Shown here: piece by piece, positions 2,573 to 40,051 of the stretch | Numbering within the stretch: position 1 is the first letter of the stretch | Layout of the letters: each line of letters begins with the position of its first letter | Assembly: GCF_037042905.1 (NCBI RefSeq) | Contig: NC_087247.1 | Location: forward strand, 13,082,001 to 13,146,000 | Direction of reading: 5' to 3' | Source of the DNA: Lytechinus pictus | Taxonomy: Eukaryota | Length of the DNA: 64,000 bases | Notes under the pieces: generated by a model | What the model was told of the DNA's origin: nothing | The model's database searches: none | What the model saw: only the letters and a program-made list of their open reading frames with translations | Translations under genes and position numbers: made by a program

Positions 2573-3604
2573 ATGACTCATGGATATGGTTTGAAGCTGG
2601 CGACCTTGGTACTCTGCCTGCTTCACTTCACTCCACCCATCTACTCAGCCCCACTCTCCTCCTACTTGGTATCATTCTTTACTCCTCCTGATGCTGACTC
2701 CGACCTACCATTCAACCACATCACCATCAACAACATCACAGGAGATGTCTATATTGGAGCAAGGGAGAGACTCTATCAACTGAACTCAGACCTGACTCTC
2801 AAACACGCCGTAGATACCGGATCATGCCCTTCTCCAGATGAAGATAACACCGATAATAATAAGCTTCTAGTGGTAGCTCCATCACCTGAGGATAAACTCA
2901 TCACATGTGGTGGCTGTGATGGTTACTGTGAGACAAGAAGCTTTACTAATATATCACATGATGTAGTGAGATATGACTCTTCTGGTACTCAGCTTGTAGT
3001 GACCACATCAGATGCACCTATAGTTGGAGCTGTGGTGTTGGGTGCTGACTATCAAAGCAATGGTGTTGGTACTGCAGATGATGGATTGTACTTATTTACG
3101 GGGATCAGTGATGCGTCAGTGAGCTTACCATCTATCTCAAAGCACAATATTGATGACTTGAGTCACGGACAACGGGTGACAGAACCTCAAGCTTCTTTCC
3201 CACAAAATATTTTCAAACATTTGATACCTTACATGGAAAACCTCTACTATTTCATGTCTAGGGGAAACAATCAGAAGAGTGCATACTTGGGGCGACTGTG
3301 TCGTAATTCATTAGACGAAACATTGTCATCCTACACAGAGATACTTCTACAGTGTGGAACTTATAGTGAGATCCAATCAGGTAATATAGGAGCAACTGGA
3401 TCCCAGCTTGCTAATTCATTCAGCATGGAGAGTGCTGATGATCTTCTGTACGCTGTATTCGGAAGTGATAGTTCTTCTGCTCTATGCATCTATAAGATGA
3501 GCGATGTAGAGCAGAGCTTTGATGATGCTGCCAAGGGATGTAGCCAATCAGGAGATAACAGAGGAACAGAGAACAACTACCTTCAAGATAGTTCATGTAA
3601 TAGT
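2573..3604 (+). CDS. Variable exon V1: signal peptide + N-terminal part of the Sema domain (344 codons), intact
   Basis: ATG at 2573, hydrophobic leader, plexin Sema motifs (FNHITI..TGDVYIGARERLYQL, NKLLVV, LITCG, LGRLC, SYTEI.LQC, LYAVF, SALCIYKM). Phase-0 donor AGT|GTAAGT at 3604/3605; acceptor ttccaacag| at 2516/2517. Confidence 0.9.
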
Positions 3605-4349
3605 GTAAGTGTAAATGTCAAGTAAGCTGAAAATCTTTAAAATCATTCTTACCATAATTCTTGTTCTTAGTGTTATAAATTGAACATGTGGCTCCGGACA
3701 GTCAAAATGGTAGTTTGATCTCTTCAAAACGGAATGAGTTCAACTTTTCGGAATAGACCTATATGGTGCTTTTCTGTTACACTCTAGTCAGTAGCACCGA
3801 ATATATCTGCATATGGCAATTAGTTTGCCGTGTATTTCCATGAATGAACATATTTATGACGACAGAAATGCATAAATCTAAAATCGTGCATTCATTATTC
3901 ATTTATCATTCATTATTATTAGAATGTACTTGATTGGGTTAAATAATGACGATCCACAGTATTGTACGACGCAATGATGGAATCAACATGAAAAATCACA
4001 CAGTTTTCAAAAACTTGGCACTTGGATGTTCAGCGTAAAGTGGTTATCCGATTCACACTTTACGCTGCATTCAAGAGTTAAGTGTTTGGCGAGATTTGAC
4101 ATCTGAGAATTAGCCACTTTAAACAATCATTCCGTACCCAAACGCTGTATCAAGTGGTCACATTAAGTGATTATTTTCACAGGCAATTAACTCGTGATTA
4201 ATTTATCTACACCAGCTAAGAATAAGCCTCATCGTTTTTCTGAAATGTATATTGTATATCATTCCCCCCTTCATTTTTATTATAATTCAATTAGCTTGAT
4301 TTCATTCCTCGTTCTACAGAAGCTTTAAAATGCCATCGACTTGTCGTAA

Positions 4350-4672
4350 AAAATCTAAATTAAAATCTAAAAAAATCCTGGGGCGATCGAGCCTTTGCTC
4401 ATGCCGGACCAGCCCTGTGGAATTCACTACCACACGAGCTGAAGAACTCAAACTCTGTAACATCCTTTAAGGGCAACCTAAAATTGCATTTGTTCACCAG
4501 CAGGTACTAGATTTGATGACAGAAATCTTTCCTTATTTGTAATTTACCCTTTCTTGTACTTCTCTTATAGTTATCTTTACTTTTATGTTTTGCTCTCTTC
4601 TAAGCGCCTTGAGCATTTAATCAAAATGGAAAAGACGCTATATAAATCATATGTATTATCATTATTATTATT
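4350..4672 (+). mobile_element. LINE/SINE 3'-end fragment, shared with 8228-8551
   Basis: Ends gcgccttgagc...gacgctatataaat..(att)n. Present only in the spacers after V1 and V2. Confidence 0.55.
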
Positions 4673-5531
4673 ACATAAAAAGTAAATAGCGAAAATTAAT
4701 CTTATATCAACATGTTCAATGAACGGTACGTGCGCATGTGGATGTCGATTAACTAGCCATAATTCTTTCCTCAACAAAAGCATATACCATTTTCAATCAG
4801 GACTACCGAATTCAGAGCATTTTTTAATTTAAGCCAGAGACCATGAACACAAACATGTATCAATGGATGTTATTCATGTCCTTAGTGGTATAATCTCACT
4901 ACAAGTGCAGTGCAACAAAGGGACAGCGGGTGGTTGCCCTATGGGTTTCAAGTAAGAATAAAGGTGGGATACAATGGGACAAGAAGAGGCTGGTAAGAAA
5001 AAAAAAGTGTTGGAAATAGATGGCTTTGTCGTGAACTGCACTATCATGACTATAGACTTACCCGTACGAATACCTCCATTCCAGACATAAGACTAGTACC
5101 CGTTACAACAAAGTCTTGGTAACACCGCTTCATGATATATGAATATACAATTCCATATTTCTTGCCATGATCAATTATTCGTGTGATATATTGACAAATA
5201 TGGCAGCTCATAATCTCCTCTACGTTCCACTCATCGAAAGTTTGCCTCATTTTTATCAGGGTTCGGAAACACAGTAAAATATTTGCAGCTTTATTGGTGT
5301 GGAAAATGATTGCTAACAATAGGAAAATAAAACTTATCATTTTTGTTGTGATTCACGAAAGAAATACATTGAAACTTTCATTCTCGTTTGTTCTGTAAAA
5401 GTATAATTTTGCTGATTAAATTTCAATCCTTGCACGAGCTGCCATGGCCTTTTGTCTGGGAACAATAGGCCAAATCATCGACCCATCGTCCCAAAAAATA
5501 TTCATATATATATATTGAATTTCATTGCCAG

Positions 5532-5628
5532 ACTTCCTCATTCGCAGCACAGGTATCATTTATATTACTCGTTTCAATCAGCGAGTTGAAAGTAGAGACC
5601 GCGATTCCATCGTGAGAATAAGGTAAGG
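5532..5628 (+). promoter_or_regulatory. V2 conserved upstream element + leader donor
   Basis: ACTTCCTCATTCGCAGCACAGGTATCA; GAATAAG|gtaagg donor at 5623. Confidence 0.6.
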
Positions 5629-6406
5629 AACATTCGGGTGTCATTCATTGCTTAATATTTCTTGAAATTATTGAACTTTTTACTGAAATAAATTCATATT
5701 TTGTGATGTGGTAGCAAAGGTCCATTTATGTACTATGCTACGCGGGCAATGTCCCGGAAAAGGGTGGTGGGGGGGGGGGGTCTGTAGGATTCTGAGGTAC
5801 ACATTGTATGTACATGTACTTCCACTGTTATGTTCATTTAATGATACATACAATGATGATGCGTAGACCTATTTACAGCAACTTTCATTGAAGATCTAAA
5901 TCGAAAATATGTTGAAATTATTTTATACATATTACATTTCTTGATTTCAATTTGAACAATTTAATTCACATGATTGTACTTGACTAAAACTCAAATTAAA
6001 AGGACAAATTAATACAGTCAAGACGTATCGTTGTATGTTGTAAAAAAATACCATGGTCAATATCAGCTTGCTCACAAGTGGACAACACTTTTAAAATGTT
6101 GTCTTTATTGCTATCATTTGATTTTCCATAATTAGGATTGGATTAATGGCAAAATAATAATTTCGCAAATTATTCATGTATATCCGTGCTACAAATCATC
6201 TTTGAATCATCTGCTTGATGGTTGTAGGTATAGTCAGTGGTCGTATTGTCACCCCGGATTTTATTGTGCTCAAATATGTCTAGCTATGATGATGGTACCC
6301 AAGTATGACTGATGTAGTAAGTAATGAAGTTAATTCATATTCAAACAGGATCATCACCTACATTTACCAAAGATCTTGACGAATAACCGAGGAAACAAGG
6401 ACAATC

Positions 6407-7441
6407 ATGACTCAAGGATACGGTTCGAAGCTGGTGATCTTGGTGTGCCTGCTTCATTTCACTCAACCCATCTACTCAGCTCCACTCTCCTCCTACCTGG
6501 TATCATCCTTTACTCCTCCTGATGCTGACTCGGACTTACCATTCAACCACATCACTTTCAACAACATCACTGGAGATGTCTACATCGGAGCACGGGAGAG
6601 ACTCTATCAACTCAACACAGATCTGACACCGAAACACACCATAGATACTGGATCATGTCAACCAGATAAAAATGATATCATTAATACCAATAATATTAGG
6701 CTTCTGGTGGTAGCTCCATCACCTGAGGATATGCTCATCACATGCGGTGGGTGTGACGGTTTTTGTGAGACAAGGAGCTTGAATAATATATCACATGATG
6801 TAGTGAGATATGACTCTTCTGGTACTCAGTATGTGGTTACGAGATCAGATGCACCTGTAGTTGGAGCTGTAGTGTTGAGTGCGGACTACCAGGATGATGG
6901 AGTTGGTACTGCAGATGATGGATTGTACTTATTTACGGGGATCAGTGATGCAACACCAAACTTTCCATCTATATCAAAGCACAATATTGATGAATTGACT
7001 CATGGACAACGGGTGACAGCACCTCAAGCTTCTTCCCCACAAAACATTTTTAAACATTTGATCCCCTTCATGGAAAATCTCTACTATCTCATGTCTAGGG
7101 GAAACAGTCAGAAGAATGCATACTTGGGGCGACTGTGCCGTAATTCATTAGACGAAGCATTGTCATCCTACACAGAGATACTTCTACAGTGTGGAACTTA
7201 TAGTGAGATCCAGTCAGGTCTTATCGGAGAAGCAGGATCCCAGCTAGCTGATTCCTTCAGCTTGGAGAGTACTGACGATCTTCTGTATGCTGTATTTGGT
7301 AGTGATAGTTCATCTGCTCTTTGCATCTATAAGATGAGTGATGTAGAGCAGAGTTTTGACGGTGCTGCCAAGGGATGTAGCCAATCAGGAGATAACAGAG
7401 GAACAGAGAACAACTATCTTCAAGGTAGTTCATGTAATAGA
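6407..7441 (+). CDS. Variable exon V2 (345 codons), intact
   Basis: Paralog of V1. Acceptor tcaaacag| at 6348/6349; phase-0 donor AGA|GTAAGT at 7441/7442. Confidence 0.9.
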
Positions 7442-8730
7442 GTAAGTGTAAATGTCAAGTAAGCTGAAAATCTTTAAAATCATTCTTACCATAATTCTTG
7501 TTCTTAGTGTTATTAATTGAACATATGGCTCCGGACAATCAAAATTGTAGTTTGATCTCTTCAAAACGGAATAAGTTCAACTTTCGGAATAGACCTATAT
7601 AGGCCTATTTGCAGATTATGGGCAATTCAGCATGGTGCCTCTCTGTTACACTCTAGTCAGTAGCACCGAATATATCTGCACATGGCAATTAGTTTGCCGT
7701 GTATTTCCATGAATGAACATATTTATGACGACAGAAATGCATAAAATCCAAAATCGTGCATTCATTATTATTCATTTATCATTTATTCATTATTATTAGA
7801 ATGTACTTGATTGAGTTAAATAATGACGATCCACAGTATTGTATGACGCAATGATGGAATCAACGTGAAAAATCACACAGAGTTTTCAAAAACTTGGCAC
7901 TTGGATGTTCAGCGTAAAGTGGTTATCCGATTCACACTTTACGCTGTATTCAAGAGTTAAGTGCTTGGCGAGATTTGACATCTGAGAAATAGCCACTTTA
8001 AACAATCATTCCGTACCCAAACTCTGTATCAAGTGGTCACATTAAGTGATTATTTTCACAGGCAATTAACTCGTGATTAATTTATCTACACCAGCTAAGA
8101 ATAGGCCTCATCGTTTTCTGAAATGTATATTGTATATCATATCCCCCTTCATTTTAATTATAATTCAATTAGCCTGATTTCATTCCTTGTTTTACAGAAG
8201 CTTTAAAATGCCATCGACTTGTCGTAAAAAAATCTAACTTAAAATCTAAAAAAATCCTGGGGCGATCGAGCCTTTGCTCATGCCGGACCAGCCCTGTGGA
8301 ATTCACTACCACACGAGCTGAAGAACTCAAACTCTGCAACATCCTTTAAGGACAACCTAAAATTGCATTTGTTCACCAGCAGGTACTAGGTTTGATGACA
8401 GAAATCTTTCCTTATTTGTAATTTACCCTTTCTTGTACTTCTCTTATCGTTCTCTTTACTTTAATGTTTTGCTCTCTTCTAAGCGCCTTGAGCATTTAAT
8501 CAAAATGGAAAAGACGCTATATAAATCATATGTATTATCATTATTGTTATTACATAAAAAGTGAATAGCGAAAATTAATCTTATATCAACATGTTCAATG
8601 AACGGACTACCGAATTCAGAGCATTTTTTTAAATTTAAACCAGAGACCATGAACACAAACATGTATCAATGGATCATGTTCTTCGTCGTATAATCATACT
8701 GCCAAGTGCAGTTGAACAAAGGGACAGCAG

Positions 8731-8885
8731 GGGCCTGTTGCATAAAACTTTTAACCTGAGAAAACTCAGGTATTTTTTACCCAAGTTTTTGCCCTGTGTT
8801 AAAGTCAATGGCAGAAATCAGACTAACCTTACTTTTCAGTTTTTACCGGAGTTTTCTAGGTAAAAAAGTTTTATGCAAAAGGCTG
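8731..8885. mobile_element. Small MITE (Harbinger/ISL2EU-like)
   Basis: Imperfect TIR ...TTGCATAAAACTTTT, CAG TSD, absent from the paralogous site at ~4927. Confidence 0.6.
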
Positions 8886-9481
8886 CAGGTGGTCGCCCTC
8901 TGGGATTCAAGTAGGAATAAAGGCGGGATACAGTGGGACAAGAAGAGGCTGGTAAGAAAAAAAGTGTGGGAAATAGATGGCTTTGTCGTGAACTGCACTG
9001 TCATGACTGTAGAATTACCCGTGCAAAATCGCCATTTCAGACATCGGGCCATCTTGACCCGTTACAACAAAGTCTTGGTAACACCGCTTCATGATATATG
9101 AATATACAATTCCATATTTCTTGCCATGATGAATCATTTATGTGATATATTGACAAATATGGCAGCCCACAATCTCCTCTACGTTCCCCTCATCGAAAGT
9201 TTGCCTCATTCAGGGTTCGGAAAAACAGTAAAATGTTAACACAATCATTGGTGTGCAATATGCTTGCTAATAAGAAAAGAAAAACTTATCATTTTTGTTG
9301 TGATTCACGAAAAAAATATATTGAAACTTTCAATTTTGTTTGCTCTGTAAAAGCATAATTTTGTAGATTGAAATTCAATCCTCTCACGAGCTGCCATGGT
9401 ATTTTGCCTGGGAACAAGAGGCCGAATCATCGACCCATCGTCGCTAAAAAGATGTAAATATATATTGAATTTTATGGCAAG

Positions 9482-9572
9482 ACTTCCTCATTTGCAGCAC
9501 TGGTATCAATTATATTACTCTCTTCAAGAGAGACCGCGATGCCTTCGTCATGTTCGTGGGAATAAGGTAAGG
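9482..9572 (+). promoter_or_regulatory. V3 conserved upstream element + leader donor
   Basis: ACTTCCTCATTTGCAGCACTGGTATCA; gtaagg donor at 9567. Confidence 0.55.
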
Positions 9573-10045
9573 AACATTCGGGTATCATTCATTGCTTAAT
9601 ATTTGAACTTTTTACTGATATGAATTTAGATCTTGTGATGTGGTAGCAAAGGTCCATTATGAACTATGTTACGAGGGCAACGTCCTGGAAGGGGGGGGGG
9701 GTCTGTAGGATTCTGAGGTACAATATGTATACAAATATTTACTTCCAATTTTATATTTATTTAATGTTGCATACAATGATTTTGCGTTGGCCTATTCACA
9801 GCCACTATCATTGAAGATCTCATTCTAAGATAGGGCTTATATCGAAATGATTTTATAAATATTACATTTCTACACTTTAATTTGAACAATTCAATTCACA
9901 TGATTGTACTTGATTAAAGATCCAATTGAAATGACAAATTGATACAGTCAACGATTACCGGTGTATGTTGTAAAAAAAATACCATGATCAATATTTGCTT
10001 GCTCACTAGTGGAAAACACTTTTAAGGGGTTGTCTTTATTGCTTT

Positions 10046-11269
10046 CATCACCAGAGATGTCTATATTGGTGCACGAGAGAGACTCTAGCTATCAACTCAA
10101 CTCAGAGCTGTCTCTCAAACACACTGTAGATACCGGATCGTGTCGTTCTCCAAATGAAGACAATACCAATAACAATAGACTTCTGGTGGTAGCTCCATTA
10201 CCTGAGGATAAACTCATCACATGTGGTGGCTGTGATGGTTTCTGCGAGACAAGGAGCTTGACTAATATATCACATGATGTAGTGAGACATGACTCTCTTG
10301 ATACTCAGCGAGTGGTTACGACATCAGATGCAGCTATTGTTGGAACTGTGGTGTTGGGTGCAGACTACCAGGATGATGAAGTTGGTAATGCAGATGGTGG
10401 ATTGCACTTATTTACTGGGATCAGTGATGCCTCAATTACCATTCGTTCTCAAAGAGAAATCTTATTGACCTAAGCTATGGGCAAGAGGTAACACATCCTC
10501 AAACCTCGTCCCGACAAAACGTTTTCAAAATGTTAATCCCTTACATGGAAAACCTCTACTATTTAATGTCTAGGGGAAACATTCAGAAGAGTGCATACTT
10601 GGGGCGACTTTGCCGTAATTCATTAGACGAAGATTTTGCGTCCTACACAGAGATACAACTACAGTGTGGATCTCACAATGAGATCCAGTCAGGTCATATA
10701 GGAGCAGCAGGATCCCAGCTAGCTGATTCCTTCAGCTTGGAGAGTACTGACGATCTTCTGTATGCTGTTTTCGGAAGTGATGTTTCATCTGCTCTTTGCA
10801 TCTATAAGATGAGTGATATAGAGCACAGTTTTGACGATGCTGCCAAGGGATGTAGCCAATCAGGAGATAACAGAGGAACAGAGAACAACTATCTTTGATA
10901 TTTGTGGATTACTTGTTTTAAGTTTGTATTCTGTGTCCGTCTCGAATTTTGTATAGAGTTGTATATATAGTTTGTTTATAATTAGCATTGAAACTAACTT
11001 TAGGGGCTTGCCTTCTCTACAAGCTTTTGCTTTTCTTGGCAAGTCCCTCCGTTCATTTCTTGTTTCTTTTCATTGATAATATTAATGCAACAAATTGTAG
11101 TTTTGTTTAATTTATATTCAACATTTGTTACGAAATTTCATTGATTTGTCTGTATTATCGATTATATTGAATATGTACTGTTACTTTGATTATATTTTGA
11201 AAAAATTGTTGAACGGAAATAAAATCTAAATCAAAAAATCTAAATCTTCAAGGTAGTACATGTAATAGA
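10046..11269 (+). pseudogene. Variable exon V3, pseudo-exon
   Basis: Acceptor, ATG and signal peptide are deleted (intron sequence fused to catcaccagagatgtctat). Frameshifts split it into ORFs 10009-10473 and 10530-10898. There is an insertion at 10896-11243. The GTAAGT donor is retained at 11270. Confidence 0.88.
10896..11243 (+). mobile_element. 5'-truncated non-LTR retroelement 3' end inserted in V3
   Basis: Flanked by ATCTT duplication; ends with AATAAA and an (AAATCT)n-like tail. Confidence 0.6.
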
Positions 11270-11482
11270 GTAAGTGTAAATGTCAAGTGAGCTAAAAATC
11301 TATCAGATCATTCTTAACAAAATTCTTGTTGTTAATGTTATTAATTGAACATATGGCTCCGGGCAATCAGAACGGTAGTTTGATCTCTTAAAAAAGGAAT
11401 GAGTTCAATTTCGAAATAGGCCTACATAAGCCTATTATGGGCACAATACAGCATGGTGCTTCAGTAACACCGAATATGTCTG

Positions 11483-15759: not shown

Positions 15760-17061
15760 ATGGCTGCTGCTCGACCAATAGCTCCTGGGAGGCTCTTGCA
15801 TTTGCTAAGTCTGAGAAGGCAAATCCAAAACGTTCAAGACAGACATGTCATATTGATGGCCTTACTCATCCGTAGACGTCAAAGACATGCAAGGCAAAGA
15901 AGAAGGTGGTGGGTCAAACCCTGGATTGAGAGACGTGTACTGTTTGGACAGTATGATAATCTGATGACGGAGTTGCAGAGAGAATGTCAGGGTGACTTCC
16001 TGAACTACATGAGGATGCCACCAGAAACGTTCCTTGAACTGTTGCAGCGCATCACTACGAGGATAGAGAAGTCCTATCGCTACCGGCAGCCACTGGATCC
16101 TGGGCTCAAACTGGCCATCACCTTGAGATATCTTGCGACCGGCAACAGCTACAAAACCCTGCAGTATGCCTTCCGTGTTGCCCATAATACGATCTCTCTG
16201 TTTATACCAGAGGTGTGCCAGGCCATCATCAGTGAATACCAAGATGAAGTATTTTCCTGTCCAACTACCCCAGATGAATGGAGAGAAGTGGCACGGACTT
16301 ACGCTGACAGATGGAACTTTCATCATGTCTGTGGAGCCTTGGACGGAAAACACGTGGCCATCAGAAATCCACCAGGCTCTGGTACGATCTACTACAACTA
16401 CAAGGGTTTCTACAGCCTCATCCTCTTGGCCCTAGTTGATGGCAATTACAAGTTCCTCTGGGCTGACGTTGGTAATCCCGGTTCATCATCGGATGCCCAG
16501 GTCTTCAACCACAGCCCGCTGAGACGTGGACTGGAGAATGGTACTCTTGGCCTGCCAGATCCAGAGCCCCTGCCAGATGATGACCGAGACACCCCTTACT
16601 TCTTAATTGGGGACGACGCCTTCCCTCTCAGGACATGGATGCAGAAGCCGTACTCCAACCGTGAGCAGACCGACGAGGAGAGAATCTTCAACTACCGTCT
16701 CTCGAGGGCTCGCCGTGTGGTGGAGAACAGCTTTGGCATCCTTGCACATCGCTGGAGATGCTTGTTGAGTACCCTACAGCTTGATCCAGAAAAAGCCAGG
16801 ACAGTCATTATGGCCTGCATGTGCCTCCACAACCTAATGAGAGATCGTTTTCCTGGGCTTCAGAACATTGACGTTGACCGTGAAGATGAGTTGGGCAACC
16901 ACATCCCTGGGGCATAAAGAAACGCAGCAGTTCTGCAGGATGTTGAACGAGTTGGCGGAGGCTACCAGGCAAACAAAGAGGGCAAGAAGCTGAAAACTTA
17001 CCTGAAGCACTACTACAACAGTCCAGTTGGAAGCCTGCCCTGGCAACAACACATGATATAG
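15760..17061 (+). CDS. Harbinger DDE transposase (HARBI1-like), premature TAA at 16915-16917
   Basis: Motifs LAITLRYLATG, GALDGKH, YYNYKG.YS, GDDAFPL, FNYRLSRARRVVENSFG. The frame continues after the TAA through YYNSPVGSLPWQ to TAG at 17061. Confidence 0.9.
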
Positions 17062-17140: not shown

Positions 17141-18095
17141 TGGAATGAATCATTTCAAAGTAGAAATGAATGACCATGTCAACAGTTATTTTAAACATAC
17201 ATTACTTTTACATCGAAAGGTAGTTTGAAATTTAAAAAGTTAACTCTCCTTAATAACATGTGTTTGAAATAAAATAATGAAGGAGAACATGTTTGAAAAA
17301 ATGTGATTTATGAGAATAAAAAAGATGTACAGATATAACATATTTTCTTTTGTCATTAATCATGTTGTTTTAAACATGATATATATTTTTCAAAGACATT
17401 TTATTAACGATAATTAATTTCATTGACCATGTTAATGTTTAAAATAAAGTTTGAAATAAATGTTCCAAAATGGGTCAGTTGTAAATTAAATTGAGAGAGT
17501 TCATCAAGTAACAATAACAATCCAAACAAAAGTTCACTGTTCGTTTTCTTTATTTGACAAGTCTGACAAGTTCAAATGGATGATGATTGATGTGACGGCG
17601 CTGTTGCTGCCTCCTTGATTTAGTGGAATGAATCATTTCAAAGAAGAAATGAATGATCATGTCAACATTTATTTTAAACAAAAATTTCTTTGACAATGAA
17701 ATGTTTGAAATAATAAACGTTGATTCTCCTTTAATAGCATGTATTTGAAATAAAAAAAAAAGAACATTTTTGAAAAAACGTGATTTATGAGAATAAAAAA
17801 GATGTACAGATATAACAAATTTTATATTGTCATTAATCATGTTGTTTTAAAAATTATATATTTTTTCCAAGACATTTTGTTAACGAAAATGAATTCTATT
17901 CACCGAGTAAATGTTTAAAAAAGTTTGAAATAAATGTTCCAAAATAGTCAAATTATAATTTGAGTTGAGAGAGTTCGTCAAGTAACAATAAAAACAATCC
18001 TAACAAAAGTTCACTGTTCATCTTCTTCATCTGACAAGTTCAACTGGGTGATGATTGATGTGTTGGCGCTGTTGCTTCCTCCTTGCTGCTGCTGC
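17141..18095. repeat. ~485-bp tandem duplication in the Harbinger intergenic/ORF2 3' region
   Basis: tggaatgaatcatttcaaag... starts at 17141 and 17624. Confidence 0.75.
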
Positions 18096-19368
18096 TGAAA
18101 GGAGGCCTGCTGTTTTTGCTGGAAGTGGGGGTGCTGCTGCTGGAAGGGGGCCTGTAAATTGGGCTGCTGAAATCCTCCCTGAGGGTTCTGAGGGGTCCAG
18201 GTGCTGCTTGGCCCGAGCATCCCAAGGAAGGAAGCAGGTGGAGCGTTCTGGGTGAAGCCGATCGGCGCTGACTGAGGCCTGAGTGGCTGGATCATCTGGG
18301 GCGAGATACTGGGGTGGTGGAAAGGTGGTCCGCCCGATCCTGGTAGCGGCTCACCAAGTTGAAAGTGTCCCTGGTGAACTCTCACCAGAGGAGTCTTGGA
18401 AGTGGGCGGACGGCCTGCAGCATCCATTCTAGCCAGGCCTGCCTTTCGTCAGCGCCTTGGGTGAGTGCCGCATCCACCTGGCTCCGGATGGCCGTCTGCT
18501 CGGTGGATGTTCTGATGAATTCCAGGAGGGCCTTGTCCACATCGGTGGGCGACCCCCTCTTCTGCCTCTTCTTGGGAGGTGCAGCCCCCTGGCTGGAGAC
18601 TTTGTTGGAGCTGGGTGCTTGGCTGGCATCTGGACCCTGCTCATCTAAACCCTCTTCGTCGGAGGCGGCTTCAGTAATTCGGCCACTGAGGTGGCCCAGT
18701 TGGCAGCCCTGTGACCGATGGACTATGTGCTTCGTCAGAAAACCAAGGTTGTTATTGACCCATCTCTGTCTGGGGGTAAGGACGATGGCCTTCTGACCAC
18801 TCTTCTTTCCAGCGGTCTTCATCTTCCCCAGGATGGTCCTCTGGCTTTTATACCATAGTCTGATGTCGGCCACTGAAAATATACAAAATGTAGAAGCAAG
18901 AAATTAGTCAACATCCAAAAAATTTGCATGTTTAACTAATAAACATCATCAATAAATCGGAATGTGCATATTTTTCAGCTACTACTTACCGGTGACTCCC
19001 AGCTTTTCCGCCATCTCCATGTACTTGCGCTCCTTCTTCTTAGAGTTTTTGAAGTCCACCTTGCTCTTGTCGTAGATGAACTCATTGTCAGCGAAAAACT
19101 CGGCCAGCTCCTGCTCCATGGCTTTGGTGATACCGCAGGTAGCATGGCCATCTATCACGTTGTTCTCATCACTGGCGGCGGCTGGTGGATCTTGGCCCCC
19201 TTCCTGCAGCATTTCATCATCCTCGGTCTGGGCTTCACCAAATTCATTACCCTCATCACCAGCTATGACAGAAGCAGTAGCTTTCTCCTCGGCCACGGGT
19301 ATAGGCTGGGGCCCTTCCTCCTCATCAGGCTGATTTTTCCTCTTTTTCCTTGACTTCTTTGGGGCCAT
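18011..19368 (-). CDS. Harbinger ORF2 Myb/SANT (MADF-like) DNA-binding protein, 2 exons (19368-18990; 18872-18011), disrupted
   Basis: NLS-like MAPKKSRKKRK; EQELAEFFADNEFIYDK...MAEKLGVT|VADIRLWYKSQRT..GK; GT-AG intron 18989-18873; TGA at 18384-18382 and a later frameshift. Confidence 0.8.
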
Positions 19369-19848
19369 GCCGATGCTTGTATTTTGGTTGTGTCTTGTTC
19401 ACTGTAGCAGCGTCTCGTCAGGCATCAGCGGTTGTAATGAAGAAAGTCGCATCGCGTGTCGTATTTATAGGCCAACACCTCGCGCGACAGGTGGTGCGGT
19501 GTGTCGCACAATGGGTCGTAGCCTTGTACGATCGGTTGTAGTAGTCGTACAACGGGTCGCTAGGTCGCGCGACATATGGCGCTACAAAACGCATATGTCG
19601 TGCGACTTGGTCGCATCATCGTTCAACCGTTGCAGCCGTTGTACGACTGTTGCACCCGGAAACATGAAAATAATCGCACGATTACGTCTCACGACTGTTG
19701 TATCCTGGTGCAGTGGTCGTTCACCTCTCGTACGATTTTATATATTGCTTGCGACTCAAAGACAACACTTCTACAACAGGACGGAAAAAATATTTTCGAA
19801 AAAAAAAATTATCGCACGAGTGAGGCGCCAATTGTGAAAGGGGCTTTA

Positions 19849-21298
19849 AACCCCTTTCACAATTGACGTATGTTAAGGTCTTAAAAGCGACTCGGGCTTT
19901 AAGACCTTAACAGACGTACGACCATTTGCGACCTTTTGGTCGTGCAACAGGCATCAATCGCCAGTCATCTCATAAGATCGCACAGAGGCTTTCACAGTTG
20001 CAACAGCTGTCGTACAACAAAAACAATCATTAAAACCCGTTGCACGAGTAAGTCGCTTATGATCCTATTGTGCTCGTGCGATCACATACGAGTGTTGCAC
20101 GAGGGATTGCGAGGGGAACGGTCGCATACATGCGAATGAAACGGTAGTGCAATGTTGCAAGCCGTTGCGATCGGTCTTGCAACAGTCTTATGGCCCATAT
20201 ATTATCGCACCCAGTCGCAAGACAGGTCTCTGTACATGTAGGTCGCTAGCACATGTGCAAGTGTTGAACGACCTCCAGTCGACTAAATGCGACTACTTAA
20301 TTGTGCCACCTCTCGCACCAAGTCGTACAACTTTGAACAACACTCACACGATGATCGCCCGACCGATGGTACGGCCTGATGCGAGTAAAGCCCCTTTCAC
20401 AATTGACGTACGACCTGTTTACGACCGCCTGCAACAGTTTTTTTCTGCTGTTGCACGATCGATCTCTTGGTGACTTGCGAGCACTCGCAGTCGTTGTAGA
20501 CGGTCGCACGAACTCGAGGTGGTCGTGACTGGTCACATCTGAACTTTGAACATGTTCAAAATCCGAACGCGATCAAATACGACCGATTCACTCGCATCAG
20601 CTCGTATCCGGGGTCGTACCATCGGTCGGGCGATCATCGTGGGAGTGTTGTTCAACGTTGCACGACTTGGTGCGAGAGGTGGCACAACTAAGTAGTCGCA
20701 TTTACTCGACTGGAGGTCGTACAACACTTGCACATGTGCTAGCGACCTACATGTACAGAGACCTGTCTTGCAACTGGGTGCGATAATATGATGTGCCATA
20801 AGACTGTTGCAAGACCGATCGCAACGGCTTACAACATTGCACTACCGTTGTGTGCGACGTACCGTTCCCCTCGCAATCCCTCGTGCAACACTCGCATGTG
20901 ATCGCACGAGCACAATAGGATCATAAGCGACTTACTCGTGCAACGGGTTTTACTGGTTGTTTTTGTTGTACGACAGCTGTTGCAACTGTGAAAGCCTCTG
21001 TGCGATATTATGAGATGACTGGCGATTGATGCCTGTTGCAGCCTGTCGCACGACCAAAAGGTCGCAAGTCGTCGTACGTCAATTGTGAAAGGGGCTTAAA
21101 TCAATTGTATTTGATCGCGTTTGGATTTTGAACATGTTCAAATTCAGATGCGACCAGTCACGACCACCTCCGACCACCTCGAATTCGTGCGTCCGTCTAC
21201 AACGACTGCGAGTGCTCGCAAGACACCAAGAGATCGATCATGCAACAACAAGAAAACAAGCTGTTGCAGGCGGTCGTACGTCAATTGTGAAAGGGGCT
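19849..21298. mobile_element. Non-autonomous Harbinger MITE carrying a nested copy of itself
   Basis: Same TIR (A(A/G)CCCCTTTCACAATTG), TAA at 21299-21301, interrupted at 20389-21096. Confidence 0.88.
20389..21096. mobile_element. Nested Harbinger MITE in inverted orientation
   Basis: Perfect TIRs, TAA TSD at 20386-20388 and 21097-21099. The body is the reverse complement of the host MITE. Confidence 0.9.
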
Positions 21299-21301
21299 TA
21301 A

Positions 21302-21989: not shown

Positions 21990-22039
21990 GCTGCTTCTGC
22001 AGCTTTCATGCTTCATTAGCATTAGCATTAGCTTCATTA

Positions 22040-22090
<51 letters not shown>

Positions 22091-23037
22091 ATGGTATTGC
22101 AGATCGCACCTCACGTAGGTTGCGTGAAACTCTGAGTAGCAATAAATTTGATAAACCTACAGCCAACCGTATGAACTTGTATTTTATTTTTTTATTTTTT
22201 TCATTAAAAGTCAGCTATTTACATAATTTTCAGTCAAATATAAAAATGCAATCATAGGCATAATATTCATGTAAAAACTCAGGGCCAGTATTTTAAAGTG
22301 TAAGCAATTGGACAAGAACTAATCTGACTAATCTAAGGGGAAAATGAAGTAACAAAACATATCATAATTATCATTATTTCACATACATACATACTTTCAC
22401 GTGTATACACCCTTACATACAAACATACGGTTCTGTACACTCTAAAAAAAGATTGAGTAAATATTTACCCAATATTGTGTAGGTGGGGAACCATGTTTGC
22501 TGTGTACTCTTTTCCCCAAAAAAAATCAACACAACATTGCGTTAGATTTACAAAGTTATTTGATATCATTTTACCCAGCAAACATGCATGTTCCTATTTT
22601 ACCAATGCAGTATTGTTAAACTACTTTAGAATGTACCACTGGCCTGCTAAAAAAAGAGCAGAAAACGTTTCGCAAAAAAAGATTCCAACTTATTTTAACC
22701 TTTTCATATTTACGATATCTCCTCACACGTTTACGATTTTGGTAAACATTTTGGAAACAAAGTGTCAATTTGCATTTCGTCTATCATTCTCACATCCTAT
22801 GCCCACCATGTCCTTATAAACTCTATATACAAAAATCGTGAAAAGAATAAACTAACTCGTTAAACCATTCTTGGTTGAACAGTGACATTTCATTTGTTAA
22901 TAACAGTGTATAGAATTATTGTTAAATTGCTTTAAATTCTTGCACGCAATTCCATTCCGTGACCTTTAGTCACAGAGCAATAAGCCAATTCATGTATTCA
23001 TTGTCGCAAAAAGGAAGGGTATATTTCAGGGTAGTGT

Positions 23038-23116
23038 TTCCTCATTTGCAACACAGGTATCATTCGCTTTTCTGTTCAAGTCGAGACAGTGATGCCTACG
23101 TCTGAATAAGGTCAGG
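23038..23116 (+). promoter_or_regulatory. V4 conserved upstream element + leader donor
   Basis: TTCCTCATTTGCAACACAGGTATCA; GAATAAG|gtcagg donor at 23111. Confidence 0.55.
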
Positions 23117-23833
23117 AACATTCGGGTGTCATTACACCTAATATTATTGAAATCATTGTACTTATTTTACTGTAAAATGAATTTTGATCTTGTGGTGTGG
23201 AAGCAAAAGTCCATTGGTGGGCAAAGTTCTCGAACAGTTGAATGTATAGATTACTTTCGGAATTTTGCACGCCAAACAGAGTCCTTAATCAATAACTCCG
23301 CAAAAACAAAACGTGAATTTCATCTTTTGATTTATAGGGATTGGTGCTTGTAGGATTTCACAGGGGTGATATTTTGCTTAAAAAACTCCAACAAGCAAAA
23401 GAAAATAAAAACTAAGAAGAAGGTATTCGTTCCAGAAGGGAGGAGAACTATGTCACGAAAAGTTTTACAGCACCCCCTCCCCCCAAAAAAAAAAAATTGA
23501 AAAAAAAAGAGAAAAAGGGTCTTCACATTTGATTATGGTCAACGTGTCCCATTACAAATATTTATTATGGCTCTAAAAAGGGGGATGATCGATATCCACC
23601 ATTACCCCCGGATCCGCCGCAGGTTGTAGGTAGTCAGTCTAAATATAGTGGCCATTGAACTTTTAAACCATCTAATATAGGGGCTTCGACTTATGCCACA
23701 GCTTACGTGACGAAAGGACATATATTACCTCAATTTTTGTACCGATACAATAATCCAGATAATTTATATTCCAACAGAATTGACCATCATTTACCAAAGA
23801 TCTTAGCGAGTAACCGAGAAAACGGGGGCAATC

Positions 23834-24864
23834 ATGACTCATGGATATGGTTTGAAGCTGGCGATCTTGGTGCTCTGCCTGCTTCACTACACTCAACCCA
23901 TCTACTCAGCCCCACTCTCCTCCTACCTGGTATCATTCTTTACTCCTCCTGATGCTGACTCCAACCTACCATTCAATCACATCACCATAAACAACATCAC
24001 TGGAGATGTCTATATTGGAGCAAGGGAGAGACTGTATCAACTCAGCTCAGACCTGACTATCACACACACCGTAGATACCGGATCATGCCCTTCTCCATAT
24101 GAAGATAATACCAATAATAATAGGCTTCTGGTGGTAGCTCCATCACCTGAGGATAAACTCGTCACGTGTGGGGTTGTGATGGGTACTGTGAGACAAGAAG
24201 CTTGAACAATATATCACGTGATGTAGTGAGATATGATGTAATTGATGATCAGCTTGTGGTGACCACATCAGATGCACCCATTGTAGGAGCTGTGGTGTTA
24301 GGTGCTGACCTTCAAGGCAATGGTGTTGGTACTGCAGATGGTGGATTGTACTTATTTACTGGGATCAGTGATGCAACTATTATGAATCCATCTATCTCAA
24401 AGCACAATCTGGTTTACCTACGCCACGACCAAAAGGTAGCCCGACCCTTATCTTCTGCCCCGCGAAACATTTTTAAACATTTGATTCCTTCCATGGAAAA
24501 CATTTATTATTTAATGTCTAGGGAAAACAGTCAGAAGAGTGCATACTTGGGGCGACTGTGCCGTAATTCATTAGATGAACAGTTAGCATTCTACACAGAG
24601 ATAGAAATACAATGTGGGTCTTACAATGAGATTCAGTCAGGTCACATAGGAGCAGCAGGATCCCATCTTGCTGACTCATTCAATATTGATAGTACTGAAG
24701 ATCTTTTGTATGCAATATTTGGAAGTGATATTTCATCTGCTCTGTGCGTCTATAAGATGAGTGATGTAGAGCAGAGTTTCGACGATGCTGCCAAGGGATG
24801 TAGCCAAACAGGAGATAACAGAGGAACGGAGAACAACTACCTTCGTGATAGTTCATGTAATAGA
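23834..24864 (+). pseudogene. Variable exon V4: full length but with a single 1-bp deletion (young pseudo-exon or assembly error)
   Basis: 1031 nt = 344 codons minus 1. It reads tgtggggttgt at ~24166-24176 where V6 has tgtgggggttgt (CGGC). Acceptor at 23777/23778 and GTAAGT donor at 24865 are intact. Confidence 0.75.
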
Positions 24865-26783
24865 GTAAGTGTAAATGTCAAGTGAGCTGAAAATCTTTCA
24901 AATAATTTTTACCATAACTCTTGTAGGTAGTGTTATTGATTGAAAATAATTGTGCCTCAGTCGATCAGAATAGTAGTTTAATCTCTTCAAAATTCAAAAT
25001 TGAATTAGTTCAAATTTCGAAATTCTAATAGGTTTTAAACGATTGAATAATGAAGAATGAATATGACTATGAAGAATGAATATAACACCCTGGTGGCCTA
25101 TTATAATGGAAGCTAAGCTTCTTATAGCAGGTCACCACGTTTCTTTTCCATCTCATCCAATGTTCCGTAATAATTTATGAAGTGCATTATACATATTATT
25201 CTGTGATTTTTTACTTTTTGTTCTTTGCTTGTCACATAATGATTTACTGTTTGCTGTTGTCGGAATCGAAGCTAAATAAAGATTCCTTTAAATAGGCATA
25301 TATATTCAGACTATGGGCAATACATCATGGCGCTCTTTTGTTACATTCTAGCATGTCTACTAAATAATTATGTCTGCACAAGGCACTTTAGTTTGCCGAG
25401 TACTTTCATGTATGATACTATATTCACGATGATAGAAATGCAAAAAATTCAAAACCATGCATTCATATCATAAAAATGTATTATTGATTTTCATGATGAA
25501 GATTCACTGTATTGTATGGCGCTATAATGGAGTTCTCAAAAACTTGGCACTTGAATGTTCAGCGTAAAGTGGTTATCCGATACACACTTTATGCTGCATT
25601 CAAGAGTTAATTTTTTGGCGAGATTTGACCTCTGAAAATTAGTCACTTTAAACAATCATTTCGTACCCAAACGCTGTATTTAGTGGTCACATTAAGTGAT
25701 TATTTATATTTTCACAGTCAATTAACTCTTATTTATCTACACCATCTAAGAATAAGCCTCATCGTTTTCTGAAATGTATGTTGTATATCTTTTTCCTCCT
25801 TCAAGTCTATTATGTTTCAATTTGCACGATTTCAGTCTTCGTTCTACAGAAGCTTTAAAGCGCCATTGTCTTGTCATAAAGTCGACATGCATGAAATGTT
25901 GTATGTCAACATGGCGAGAAAAGTTATGTTATAAGTTACGACATATAAAAAGTAAATAGCAAAATTAATATTATATCAACATGATAAATGAACGGTGCGT
26001 GCGCATGTGGATGCCGATCTTTAACTAGCAATAATTCTTTCCTCAACAAAAGCATATACCATTTTCAATCATGACTACCGAATTCAGAGCATTTTTTATA
26101 TTTAAACCAGAGACCATGAACACAAACATGTATCAATGGATCATGTTCTTAGTGGTATAATCATACTAACAAGTGCAGTGGAACAAAGGGACAGCAGGTG
26201 GTCGTCCTCTGTGATTCAAGTGAGAATAAAGGCGGGATACAATGGGACAAGAAGAGGCTGGTAAGAAAATAAGAGTGTGGGAAATAGATGGCTTTGTCGT
26301 GAACTTCACTGTCATGACTGTAGACTTACCCATGCAAATACCCCCGTTTCAGACATAAGGCCAGACTGACCCGTTACAACAAAGTCTTGGTAACACCGTT
26401 GCATGATATGTAAATATACAATTCCATATTTCTTGCCATGATGAATCATTCATGTGATATATTGACAACATATGGCAGCCCACAAACGCCTTCGTTCCAC
26501 TCATTGAAAATTTGTCTCGTTTTCATCAGGGTGCAGAAACACAGTAGGACCCACGTCTAAAATGTTTGCAGAGTCAATGGTGTGGAAACTTATTTTCTTG
26601 TGATTCACGAAAAAATAATAATGTGACCTTCATTATTGTTTGTTCTGTAATGCTCTTTAATTTTATAGCCAGATTAAATTCAAATTCTTGTACGCGATGC
26701 CATGGCCTTTTGTCAGAGAGTAATTAGCCAATTCATCGATCCATAGTCGCCAAAAAAATATATGTATTGAATTTTAGGGCAAG

Positions 26784-26909
26784 ACTTCCTCATTTGCCGC
26801 ACAGGTATCACTTATATTACTCTATTCAATCAGGGAGTTGAAAGTAGAGACATCGATGCCTTCGTGGGAATAAGGTACCACCGGTAAGGAACCGGTTAGA
26901 AAGGTAAGG
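26784..26909 (+). promoter_or_regulatory. V5 conserved upstream element + locally triplicated leader donor
   Basis: ACTTCCTCATTTGCCGCACAGGTATCA; candidate donors at 26875 (gtacca), 26884 and 26904 (gtaagg). Confidence 0.55.
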
Positions 26910-27559
26910 AACATTCGACTGTCATTCATTGCTTAATATTTCTTGAAATTATGGAACTTTTTACTGAAATAAATTTAGATCAAGTGATGTGGTAGCAAAA
27001 GTTCATCGATGTGCTAGGGTAAGAGGGCAATGTTCCGAGGGGAAGGGAGGGGCCTGTACGATTATGAGGTTAGAAATATATACTTTGTACTTCCAATTTT
27101 ATGTTCATTACAGTAGATTTTTCTATGGGATGCATATGAATTTAGAACAACTTTCATTGAAGATCTGAATCGATAATATTTTTAAGAAATTATTTCGTGC
27201 ATTTTATATTTCTGTATCATAATTCAAACAGATTGATATGCATGATCATACCTGGCAAAAACTTTACTTAAAAGAGAAACTTAAAACAGGCTACTAGTAT
27301 TTTATAAAGTAATCATTTATGAAAATATCAAACCTGTTTGTCGGAGTGGACAGCCCTTTTAAGGGGTCGTCTTCATTTTGAACAATGTTAATATTGTTGT
27401 TAACATATATAAAGTAATTTTAGTAATAATGATAACATCTTACTTCCATTATGATTGTACAGGCCGGAGTTAACAAGATAGATCATTTATATTCTCTATA
27501 ACAGAATCGACCTTCATTTACCAAGATCTTGGCGAAATACCGAGGAAAAGGGGACAATC

Positions 27560-28594
27560 ATGACTCAAGGATATGGTTTGAAGCTGGCGACCTTAGTCTT
27601 CTGCCTGCTTCACTTCACTCCACCCATCTACTCAGCTACACTCTCCTCCTACCTGGTATCATCCTTTACTCCTCCTGATGCTGACTCGGACCTACCATTC
27701 AACCACATCACCATCAACAATTACATCACCGGTGATGTCTATATTGGAGCAAGGGAGAGACTCTATCAACTCAACACAGCCCTGACTCTCAAACACACAG
27801 TAGATACAGGATCGTGTCGTTCTCCAAATGAAGATAATACCAATAACAATAGGCTTCTAGCGGTAGCTCCATCACCTGAAGATAAACTCATCACTTGTGG
27901 TGGTTGTGATGGTTTCTGTGAGACAAGGAGCTTGACTAATATATCACATGATGTAGTGAGACATGACTCTTCTGGTACTCAGTATGTGGTTACGACATCA
28001 GATACACCTATCGTTGGAGCTGTACTGTTGGGTGCGGACTACCAGGAAGATGGAGTTGGTACTGCAGATGAGAGATTATACTTATTTACGGGGATCAGTG
28101 ATGCATCACTTACCTTTCGATCTATCTCAAAACACAACCTTTTTGATCTTAAGAATGAACAACATGTAACACAACCCCTATCTTCTGCCCCACAAATCAT
28201 TTTCAAATATTTGATTGCTTATAGGGAAAACCTCTTCTATTTCATGTTTAGGGGGAACATACAGAATAATGCACATTTGGGGCGACTTTGCCGTAATTCA
28301 TTAGATGAACAGTTAGCATCCTACACAGAGATACAACTTCAATGTGGATCTCACAATGAGATCCAGTCAGGTCATATCGGAGCAGCAGGATCCCAGTTAG
28401 CTGATTCATTCAGCATGGAGAGTACAGATGACCTTCTGTATGCTGTATTCGGAAGTGAAAGTTCATCTGCTCTATGCATCTACAAGATGAGTGATGTAGA
28501 GCAGAGCATTGACGATGCTGCCAAGGGATGTAGCCGATCAGGAGATACAAGAGGAACGGAGAGCAACTACCTTCAAGATAGTACATGTAATAGT
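27560..28594 (+). CDS. Variable exon V5 (345 codons), intact
   Basis: Paralog of V1/V2. Acceptor tataacag| at 27504/27505; phase-0 donor AGT|GTGAGT at 28594/28595. Confidence 0.9.
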
Positions 28595-39996: not shown

Positions 39997-40051
39997 GTTA
40001 GTGTGTTCTCGATCATAAAGTGAAAGGACTTACCTTTTATTTTCCTTGCAG

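What the first reader, a model, noticed from the sequence alone, without database searches (positions are those of the whole stretch)
2820..28360. Hypervariable patches in the Sema cassettes against a conserved framework
Seen in V1/V2/V4/V5: GSC[PSPDED/QPDKNDII/PSPYED/RSPNED]NT; R(Y/H)D[SSGT/SSGT/VIDD/SSGT]Q; SDA[SVSLP/TPNFP/TIMNP/SLTFR]SISKHN[IDDLSHGQRVTEPQASFPQ/IDELTHGQRVTAPQASSPQ/LVYLRHDQKVARPLSSAPR/LFDLKNEQHVTQPLSSAPQ]. Flanking strands and cysteines are nearly invariant. Inference: diversifying selection on loops of the beta-propeller binding face.
Basis: partly seen in the sequence, partly recalled or inferred. Interest (0 to 1): 0.7.

Follow-up and report, generated by a model that had tools for sequence, protein, structure and literature searches.

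The report
Variable loops in urchin plexin cassettes
A sea urchin plexin receptor gene carries a row of alternative first coding exons that differ mainly in four surface loops on one face of the receptor head; the loops evolve about four times more freely than the scaffold, but positive selection on them is not proven.

Summary
The window (Lytechinus pictus) has six tandem copies of a 1.03 kb plexin exon (signal peptide plus Sema blades 1 to 5C). V1, V2 and V5 are intact, V4 lacks one base, and V3 and V6 are dead. Differences sit in the four quoted patches (entropy 1.23 vs 0.37 bits, permutation p<=0.002). Two other urchin cassette groups vary at the same places.

The scaffold has dN/dS about 0.23 to 0.32. 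The patches have about 0.92 to 0.98, which is not different from 1. Site models give omega>1 with one tree (p=4e-4), but the cassettes are mosaics (PHI p=0.0005). With segment trees the signal falls to p=0.015-0.19.

The patches are not free of constraint: patch C is identical in V5 and its L. variegatus counterpart (P=1.5e-5 under neutrality).

By strand topology the patches are the D1-A2, D2-A3, B3-C3 and C3-D3/D3-A4 loops, which share one face. In Plexin-B1 three of these loops belong to a nanobody epitope that does not overlap the semaphorin site.

Contigs of public runs show a leader exon spliced to V5 and a V4-type exon spliced to constant exon C1a.

This scan has already noted the same locus (C1a/C1b, dead V6).

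The parts
2573..3604 (+). Cassette V1: intact exon, signal peptide + Sema blades 1 to 5C, donor AGT|GTAAGT
   Evidence: ORF; Pfam Sema; Drosophila PlexA 6fkm E 1e-15; AF2 pLDDT 80 and Foldseek plexin hits; donor position matches S. purpuratus model P0016
6407..7441 (+). Cassette V2: intact exon, 85% aa identity to V1
10032..10895 (+). Cassette V3: pseudogene, 5' and 3' ends lost, frameshifts
23834..24864 (+). Cassette V4: open on both sides of a single missing base at about 24172; a V4-type exon is spliced to C1a in run X1
27560..28594 (+). Cassette V5: intact exon; contigs of run X2 cover it and stop at its donor
33553..34994 (+). Cassette V6: pseudogene (stop in the signal peptide, frameshifts, about 400 bp insertion at 34396-34790)
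2828..2845 (+). Patch A in V1 (res 86-91): D1-A2 insertion next to invariant C85; varies in length. V2 6659-6682, V4 24089-24106, V5 27818-27835
2978..2989 (+). Patch B in V1 (res 136-139): D2-A3 loop, highest entropy (1.97 bits). V2 6815-6826, V4 24238-24249, V5 27968-27979
3116..3130 (+). Patch C1 in V1 (res 182-186): B3-C3 loop. V2 6953-6967, V4 24376-24390, V5 28106-28120
3149..3205 (+). Patch C2 in V1 (res 193-211): C3-D3 loop, strand 3D with alternating fixed (L196, Q200, V202, P205) and variable positions, D3-A4 loop. V2 6986-7042, V4 24409-24465, V5 28139-28195
26700..26901 (+). V5 promoter block and short non-coding leader exon, ending at donor 26901. It is spliced to 27503, 57 bases before the V5 ATG. 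Homologous blocks lie about 600-750 bp upstream of V1, V2, V4 and V6
   Evidence: joint 26901->27503 (GT..AG) in runs X1 and X2; sequence; alignment; 10.9% divergence from L. variegatus against 28-50% in the flanks
39781..40005 (+). Constant exon C1a (continues the Sema domain); acceptor of the V4-type transcript
   Evidence: 28/28 loose letters after 24864 equal 39783-39810; translation and homology to P0016

Best explanation
The region is the 5' part of one plexin gene built like a variable-exon cluster. Each unit has its own conserved promoter block and short leader exon. Each unit also has one large exon that encodes the signal peptide and Sema blades 1 to 5C. That exon is spliced to shared constant exons from 39781 onward.

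The cassettes keep a propeller scaffold under purifying selection, and gene conversion partly homogenises it. Four loops (D1-A2 insertion, D2-A3, B3-C3, and the C3-D3/3D/D3-A4 stretch) take amino-acid changes about as fast as synonymous changes. These loops lie together on one face of blades 1 to 4. The loop versions are older than the scaffold around them. Short conversion tracts move them between cassettes. Once set, they can be held fixed across species.

The most likely reading is that the loops give each cassette its own surface, that is, a cassette-specific interaction or regulatory property. The cassettes were diversified and are then maintained; they are not evolving in a continuing arms race.

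Shown: the anatomy, the clustering, the rates, the mosaicism, and one V-to-constant splice. Inferred: that the loops contact a partner, and which partner.
For: Anatomy.

Splicing: leader exon to V5, and a V4-type donor to C1a.

Clustering: entropy 1.23 vs 0.37 bits, p<=0.002. The same hot spots occur in two independent cassette groups, 2.06 vs 0.79 and 1.27 vs 0.40.

Rates: scaffold omega 0.23 (CI 0.18-0.29) by NG86 and 0.32 by ML; patches 0.98 and 0.92. 15 of 31 patch codons fall in the omega>=1 classes against 22 of 277 elsewhere, Fisher p 7e-8.

Constraint after divergence: V5 and L. variegatus LvC have 0 non-synonymous changes in 53.8 sites of patch C. P is 1.5e-5 at the scaffold's synonymous rate and 0.019 at its non-synonymous rate. 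Flanking non-coding DNA differs by 11-50%. Patches B, C1 and C2 keep their length in all 12 Lytechinus cassettes.

Mosaicism: PHI p 0.0005. Segment trees improve lnL by 238. V4 and LvA share C1, but LvA carries a V1-type C2, 21/60 vs 6/60 differences.

Older patch lineages: patch dS is 1.56 times scaffold dS (CI 0.97-2.48). C2 types differ by 26-43%, as much as Lytechinus differs from Strongylocentrotus there.

One face: strand register from the AF2 model, anchored on the 5C-5D extrusion, the A5-B5 loop and the D1-A2 insertion.
Against: A patch omega near 1 is what unconstrained loops would give, and the patches were picked after seeing them.

Cross-species conservation rests on one cassette pair. 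In V4/LvA the C2 patch was replaced.

Three of six cassettes here are broken, and L. variegatus has only two intact ones plus remnants at this gene. That pattern fits birth-and-death turnover.

No binding partner is known.

The face assignment comes from secondary structure and topology, not from coordinates.

Splicing evidence is one contig per junction, from assembled contigs of runs whose RNA nature is only inferred. Use of V1 and V2 was not tested.
Confidence: 0.55

Rival explanations
1. Relaxed constraint only. The four patches are the least constrained exposed loops of any plexin Sema domain. Recently duplicated, partly redundant cassettes drift there, gene conversion shuffles the differences, and no cassette-specific function exists.
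For: Patch omega is 0.92-0.98 and cannot be told from 1. The same stretches align poorly and carry indels across plexin classes. Three of six cassettes are dead. Cassette number differs between sister species.
Against: V5/LvC patch C has no amino-acid change, where 10 would be expected at the scaffold's synonymous rate. Loop length is fixed in B, C1 and C2. Fixed and variable positions alternate along strand 3D. The C2 types look as old as the genus split.
Confidence: 0.27
2. Continuing positive diversifying selection (omega>1) on a ligand-contact surface, for example in an arms race or in self/non-self recognition.
For: Single-tree site models: M2a vs M1a LRT 15.8, with 4% of sites at omega 3; M8 vs M8a LRT 17. 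Residual signal with partitions: 3 segments p 0.015; M8 vs M8a with 5 segments p 0.05. The highest posteriors are at S197, S162, S341 and S184. Some close pairs have patch dN/dS of 1.3-1.7.
Against: The signal shrinks or vanishes once mosaic history is allowed: 5 segments p 0.19, 6 segments p 0.066. Recombination is known to inflate these tests. Patch omega as a whole is not above 1. Patch dS is raised too. The patch is frozen in V5/LvC. Three patches map to loops that lie outside the Sema4D contact site in Plexin-B1.
Confidence: 0.13
3. Artefact: the pattern comes from misalignment, pseudogene decay or assembly error in a repeated region.
For: V4 carries a frameshift. A Logan contig jumps between V4 and V5 at homologous places.
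Against: B, C1 and C2 align without gaps. V1, V2 and V5 are open, with scaffold omega 0.2-0.3. NCBI proteins of L. pictus, L. variegatus and S. purpuratus show the same pattern. Independent contigs match V5 without differences.
Confidence: 0.05

Closest known systems
Plexin Sema domains (Plexin-A/B; PDB 6FKM, 3OKY, 3OL2, 8BB7)
   Same: Same fold and cysteine framework. Profile E 1.5e-43 to Drosophila PlexA; Foldseek E 7e-18. The 5C-5D extrusion and the A5-B5 loop are in the expected places.
   Different: Known plexin genes are described with one Sema-encoding 5' exon. Here at least six alternative copies precede one constant region. The variable loops are not those shown to contact semaphorin in Plexin-B1.
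Clustered protocadherin and UGT1A loci (variable first exons, each with its own promoter, spliced to constant exons)
   Same: A tandem array of large 5' exons, each behind a conserved promoter block. At least one is spliced over downstream cassettes to shared exons. Gene conversion homogenises part of the exon while other parts stay distinct. The parallel with protocadherin gene conversion is from my own knowledge (Noonan et al. 2004) and was not checked here.
   Different: Each cassette also has a separate non-coding leader exon. The variable exon encodes only part of one domain, so the domain is completed by constant exons. Nothing is known about promoter choice or homophilic binding.
Echinoderm plexin and semaphorin expansion (Whittaker et al. 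2006; Junqueira Alves et al. 2019, PMC6374515)
   Same: Those surveys report many plexin-B-like genes in S. purpuratus and Acanthaster. NCBI names these cassettes 'plexin-B2-like'.
   Different: The text I read does not mention first exons or alternative exons. Part of the apparent gene count may be cassettes annotated as separate 350-aa genes that read into the intron (...VSVNVK stop).
Plexin-B1 epitope of nanobody VHH15 (PMC10206189)
   Same: The epitope is made of the D1-A2 insertion, the D2-A3 loop, the B3-C3 loop and others. By strand register these loop names match patches A, B and C1. Binding there lowers Sema4D binding allosterically.
   Different: The match is one of loop names derived from topology, not a superposition. 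The mammalian face is not known to bind a natural ligand.

Membership tests
Plexin receptor | N-terminal seven-bladed Sema propeller of plexin type | tested here: met
   Pfam Sema. The best solved relatives are all plexins. AF2 model pLDDT 80 with Foldseek plexin hits at E 1e-16 to 1e-18. The V exon supplies blades 1 to 5C.
Plexin receptor | Rest of the Sema domain, then PSI and IPT/TIG domains, encoded downstream and joined to the cassette | tested here: met
   C1a continues the domain in frame. Further constant exons match PSI/TIG-bearing urchin proteins. A V4-type donor is joined to 39781.
Plexin receptor | Cytoplasmic plexin GAP domain | not tested
   It lies beyond the window. Syntenic S. 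purpuratus and L. variegatus genes carry Plexin_cytopl. Earlier scan note s1-317528 reports a plexin tail without the GAP arginines 10 kb beyond the window; I did not check whether it is the same gene.
Variable-first-exon gene cluster (protocadherin/UGT1A type) | Tandem similar 5' exons, each with its own promoter | tested here: met
   Six units. A conserved upstream block with a CCAAT box and a leader exon. The V5 leader is spliced to the V5 exon.
Variable-first-exon gene cluster (protocadherin/UGT1A type) | Each variable exon spliced directly to the shared constant exons, one per transcript | tested here: inconclusive
   One contig joins a V4-type exon to C1a, skipping V5 and V6. V5 contigs stop at the donor. 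V1 and V2 were not examined (one read-laying run allowed). Contigs cannot show full transcripts.
Variable-first-exon gene cluster (protocadherin/UGT1A type) | Cell-specific or stochastic choice among cassettes | not testable with these tools
   Needs single-cell or long-read RNA data.
Positively selected recognition surface (MHC groove or immune-receptor type) | dN/dS above 1 at the variable sites, robust to recombination | tested here: not met
   Patch omega is 0.92-0.98. The LRT for omega>1 gives p 4e-4 on one tree but 0.015-0.19 with segment trees.
Positively selected recognition surface (MHC groove or immune-receptor type) | Variable sites clustered on one exposed surface that contacts the ligand | tested here: inconclusive
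   One face by topology. Ligand contact is unknown. Three loops lie outside the Sema4D site in Plexin-B1. No coordinates were available for a superposition.

The most novel reading that the evidence does not exclude
The cassette array gives one plexin a small repertoire of heads that differ on the propeller face that semaphorins use for face-to-face dimerisation. Cassette choice would then set a recognition code (homophilic or cassette-matched Sema-Sema pairing, or recognition of varied non-self ligands). This would be a protocadherin/Dscam-like or immune-type diversification built on a plexin. Earlier notes suggest the plexin may signal without GAP activity.
Probability: 0.15. Interest if true: 0.85.

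Novelty: new variant of a known kind. Interest (0 to 1): 0.55.

Why it matters
Plexins are treated as single-head receptors whose ligand specificity is fixed per gene. This gene can mount different Sema heads on one stalk. The differences are focused on one face, moved about by gene conversion, and in one case frozen across species. That makes the locus a natural experiment on what this face of the plexin propeller does.

It would also explain part of the reported 'expansion' of urchin plexins as alternative cassettes annotated as separate genes.

For method: the locus is a clear case where site models report positive selection on a single tree and largely lose the signal once mosaic history is allowed.

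Tried and rejected
1. My first strand register (N-terminal strand taken as 7D) put the patches on the bottom face, near the MET-HGF-beta site. I withdrew it after anchoring on the 5C-5D extrusion, the A5-B5 loop and the D1-A2 insertion. Only the tip of the 3C-3D hairpin (193-197) stays on that side.

2. I searched open papers for plexin-side contact residues. None lists them. Only PlxnA2 A396 is confirmed as a contact, and it aligns just after the V exon, in the constant exon. PlxnA2 D193 and F221 as contacts are my recollection only. They were not found in the library and sit uneasily, so I did not use them.

3. Janssen 2010, Liu 2010 and Whittaker 2006 are not held.

4. No DNA was available for other cassettes: P0002 is not on record, and P0012 and P0014 come without DNA. 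The other six L. pictus cassettes entered only the protein analysis.

5. Codon analysis of the second array (group B) was not attempted: identity is 55-76%, so synonymous sites are saturated.

6. The nine variants seen in run X1 all lie outside the patches, but there are too few for a test.

7. The idea that the pattern is pseudogene decay was rejected: scaffold omega is 0.2-0.3.
Full report
WHAT IS THERE

The window is from Lytechinus pictus. The closest database proteins are 'plexin-B2-like [Lytechinus pictus]'.

tblastn with the first ORF finds six tandem copies of one large exon:
- V1 2573-3604, V2 6407-7441 and V5 27560-28594 are open.
- V4 23834-24864 is open on both sides of one missing base at about 24172.
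- V3 (10032-10895) and V6 (33553-34994) are broken.

The whole unit of about 3.8 kb is repeated, not only the exon. A Harbinger-type transposase ORF (15760-16917) lies between V3 and V4.

Each exon encodes a signal peptide and about 320 residues of a plexin Sema domain:
- Pfam Sema.
- Drosophila PlexA 6fkm at E 1e-15 with one sequence and 1.5e-43 with a profile.
- AF2 model with mean pLDDT 80.
- Foldseek hits that are all plexins, then MET and RON.

All open copies end at AG(T/A)|GTAAGT. In S. purpuratus the NCBI model P0016 joins the homologous exon at that same point to the next Sema exon.

GENE MODEL

The next exons lie at 39781-40005 (C1a), about 40070-40279 (C1b), 42363-42518, 43063-43182, 49288-49425 and 52980-53129.

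I laid Logan contigs of four public runs on 23700-29600. They gave two junctions:
- 26901->27503 (GT..AG), in runs X1 and X2. This joins a short leader exon to the V5 coding exon 57 bases before its ATG.
- An X1 contig that leaves a V4-type exon at its donor and continues with 28 letters identical to 39783-39810. This sequence is unique in the window. The joint is therefore 24864|39781, and V5 and V6 are skipped.

X2 contigs cover the V5 leader and exon and stop at the donor.

An alignment of the upstream regions shows a conserved block before each cassette. It contains a CCAAT box, the motif TTCCTCATTTGCA(A/G)CACAGGTATCA and a leader exon ending AAG|GTAAGG. Between L. pictus V5 and its L. variegatus counterpart this block is 10.9% divergent, where the flanks are 28-50% divergent.

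So this is a variable-exon array in front of one constant region.

Limits of this evidence:
- There is one contig per junction.
- The RNA nature of the runs is inferred from the spliced contigs.
- V1 and V2 were not examined.
- The V4-type contig carries two differences from the reference, so it may be an allele or a near-identical cassette.

THE OBSERVATION

With 12 Lytechinus cassettes (V1, V2, V5, six further L. pictus proteins and three from L. variegatus):
- The 34 patch positions have mean entropy 1.23 bits against 0.37 elsewhere.
- Window scans and autocorrelation reject a random spread (p 0.0002-0.008).
- The same positions are the most variable in a second Lytechinus array on another chromosome (2.06 vs 0.79) and in a S. 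purpuratus group (1.27 vs 0.40).

RATES

I made a codon alignment of nine cassettes with DNA. These were V1, V2, V4 (read with N at the break, that codon excluded) and V5; L. variegatus LvA, LvC and LvD; and S. purpuratus SpA and SpB.

NG86 over 21 Lytechinus pairs:
- Scaffold: dS 0.35, dN 0.079, omega 0.23 (bootstrap CI 0.18-0.29).
- Patches: dS 0.52, dN 0.51, omega 0.98 (CI 0.56-1.54).

None of 1000 random sets of blocks of the same sizes reached omega 0.99; the maximum was 0.73.

My own GY94-F3x4 likelihood code gave omega 0.32 for the scaffold and 0.92 for the patches. Branch lengths came from M0, with one scale per partition. Fixing patch omega at 1 costs nothing (LRT 0.13, p 0.72).

RECOMBINATION

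- The PHI test gives p 0.0005.
- Five segment trees fit 238 lnL units better than one tree.
- The mosaic can be read directly. V4 and LvA are 2-10% apart along the exon and share patch C1 (TIMNP). In codons 200-219 they differ at 21 of 60 bases, and there LvA is V1-like with 6 of 60 differences.
- V1 and V2 differ by 10-19% in the exon but by only 2-4% in the 1.1 kb of intron behind it.

SITE MODELS

| Test | Trees | LRT | p |
|---|---|---|---|
| M2a vs M1a | one tree | 15.8 | 4e-4 |
| M2a vs M1a | 5 segments | 3.3 | 0.19 |
| M2a vs M1a | 6 equal segments | 5.4 | 0.066 |
| M2a vs M1a | 3 segments | 8.5 | 0.015 |
| M8 vs M8a | one tree | 17.0 | 2e-5 |
| M8 vs M8a | 5 segments | 2.65 | 0.05 |

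On one tree M2a puts 4% of sites at omega 3. In every version about a quarter of sites sit at omega about 1 and the rest at about 0.19. The relaxed sites are concentrated in the patches: 15 of 31 against 22 of 277, p 7e-8.

Positive selection is therefore suggested at most, not shown.

NOT NEUTRAL EITHER

V5 and LvC are the closest cross-species pair.
- Patch C (24 codons) has 0 non-synonymous changes and 1 synonymous change by the NG86 count.
- P is 1.5e-5 if the patch evolved at the scaffold's synonymous rate, and 0.019 at its non-synonymous rate.
- This stretch is the least diverged part of the exon (5.3%), while non-coding flanks differ by 11% or more.
- Patches B, C1 and C2 never change length in Lytechinus.
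- Along strand 3D, fixed residues (L196, Q200, V202, P205) alternate with variable ones.
- C2 occurs as a few types that differ by 26-43% in DNA. That is as much as Lytechinus differs from Strongylocentrotus in that segment.
- Patch dS is 1.56 times scaffold dS (CI 0.97-2.48).

The simplest account is that old, distinct loop versions are kept while conversion homogenises the scaffold around them and sometimes moves a loop version to another cassette.

WHERE THE PATCHES SIT

No coordinates are given out, so I used the DSSP string of the model. I fixed the strand register on three landmarks from the literature:
- the extrusion between 5C and 5D;
- the long A5-B5 loop, 19 residues in PlxnA2, which matches V1 275-289;
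- the D1-A2 insertion.

This gives:
- Patch A = D1-A2 insertion.
- Patch B = D2-A3 loop.
- Patch C1 = B3-C3 loop.
- Patch C2 = C3-D3 loop, strand 3D and the D3-A4 loop.

D-A and B-C loops lie on one face of a propeller. This is the face semaphorins use to dimerise. So the patches form an arc on one face from blade 1/2 to blade 3/4.

In Plexin-B1 the D1-A2 insertion and the D2-A3 and B3-C3 loops are part of the epitope of nanobody VHH15. According to the authors, that epitope does not overlap the Sema4D site, and the nanobody inhibits allosterically. They also say the B3-C3 loop is not in a region known for ligand binding.

The one plexin contact residue I could confirm, PlxnA2 A396, aligns just after the cassette, in the constant exon.

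So 'one surface' is supported by inference. 'The semaphorin-binding face' is not supported for three patches and is open for C2.

COMPARISON AND NOVELTY

Echinoderm plexin expansion is on record. I found no paper describing alternative Sema cassettes.

NCBI annotates the cassettes as separate genes of about 350 aa that read into the intron. L. variegatus has two intact cassettes, a pseudogene and a fragment before the orthologous constant region. S. purpuratus has one within 10 kb. The array is therefore young and turning over.

Earlier notes of this scan on the same window describe the duplicated C1a/C1b exon and the dead V6. I confirmed the C1a start and V6's state. Their notes on a GAP-dead plexin tail and an ITAM-like motif elsewhere were not checked.

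CAVEATS

- There are nine sequences.
- The likelihood code is my own, with fixed branch lengths.
- The patches were defined after inspection.
- In scripts only, the two pieces of V6 were laid side by side without its insertion for a distance table.

No joined V-plus-constant protein was folded or searched.

Noticed in passing
window 1860-2100, 5700-5950, 23130-23370, 26700-26901, 32650-32900: Each cassette has a conserved upstream block about 600-750 bp before its ATG. It contains a CCAAT box, the motif TTCCTCATTTGCA(A/G)CACAGGTATCA and a short leader exon ending AAG|GTAAGG. This recalls the conserved promoter element of protocadherin variable exons.
   Followed up: partly
window 3600-4750 vs 7440-8600: The intron behind V1 and the one behind V2 are 96-98% identical, while the exons are only 81-90% identical. 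A recent conversion or unequal crossover stopped inside the 3' part of the exon.
   Followed up: partly
window 24575 and 28316: A contig of run X1 jumps between homologous places of V4 and V5, with 10 other letters between. It is either an assembly chimera between paralogues or a recombinant V4/V5 allele.
   Followed up: no
window 15760-16917: An intact 385-aa Harbinger/PIF-type transposase ORF (DDE_Tnp_4, E 4e-32) lies between V3 and V4, next to a G+C-rich stretch at 18000-21000.
   Followed up: no
window 34396-34790: The insertion of about 400 bp that breaks V6 is full of short inverted AATCTCGAGATT-like repeats. It is probably a small non-autonomous transposon.
   Followed up: no
window 53580-56090: A long tandem repeat reads as an 836-aa ORF of VVHKELKNKKLQS units. 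It starts about 450 bases after the constant exon at 52980-53129. It is probably a minisatellite, not a gene.
   Followed up: no
P0002-P0011, P0013 (database proteins): NCBI models treat single cassettes as separate 'plexin-B2-like' genes of about 350 aa that run into the intron (...VSVNVK stop). This inflates urchin plexin gene counts.
   Followed up: partly
P0023-P0042 (L. pictus contig of 31,958,207 bases; L. variegatus contig of 31,190,146 bases): A second family of at least ten cassette-like Sema exons lies on another chromosome. They are 55-76% identical to each other and have the same four variable loops.
   Followed up: partly
P0008, P0009: Two L. pictus cassettes have a different 3' end (…GCMQTDDPNEYNNAYLSGSVCSTV…). 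A separate subtype or another gene's cassettes may lie outside the window.
   Followed up: no
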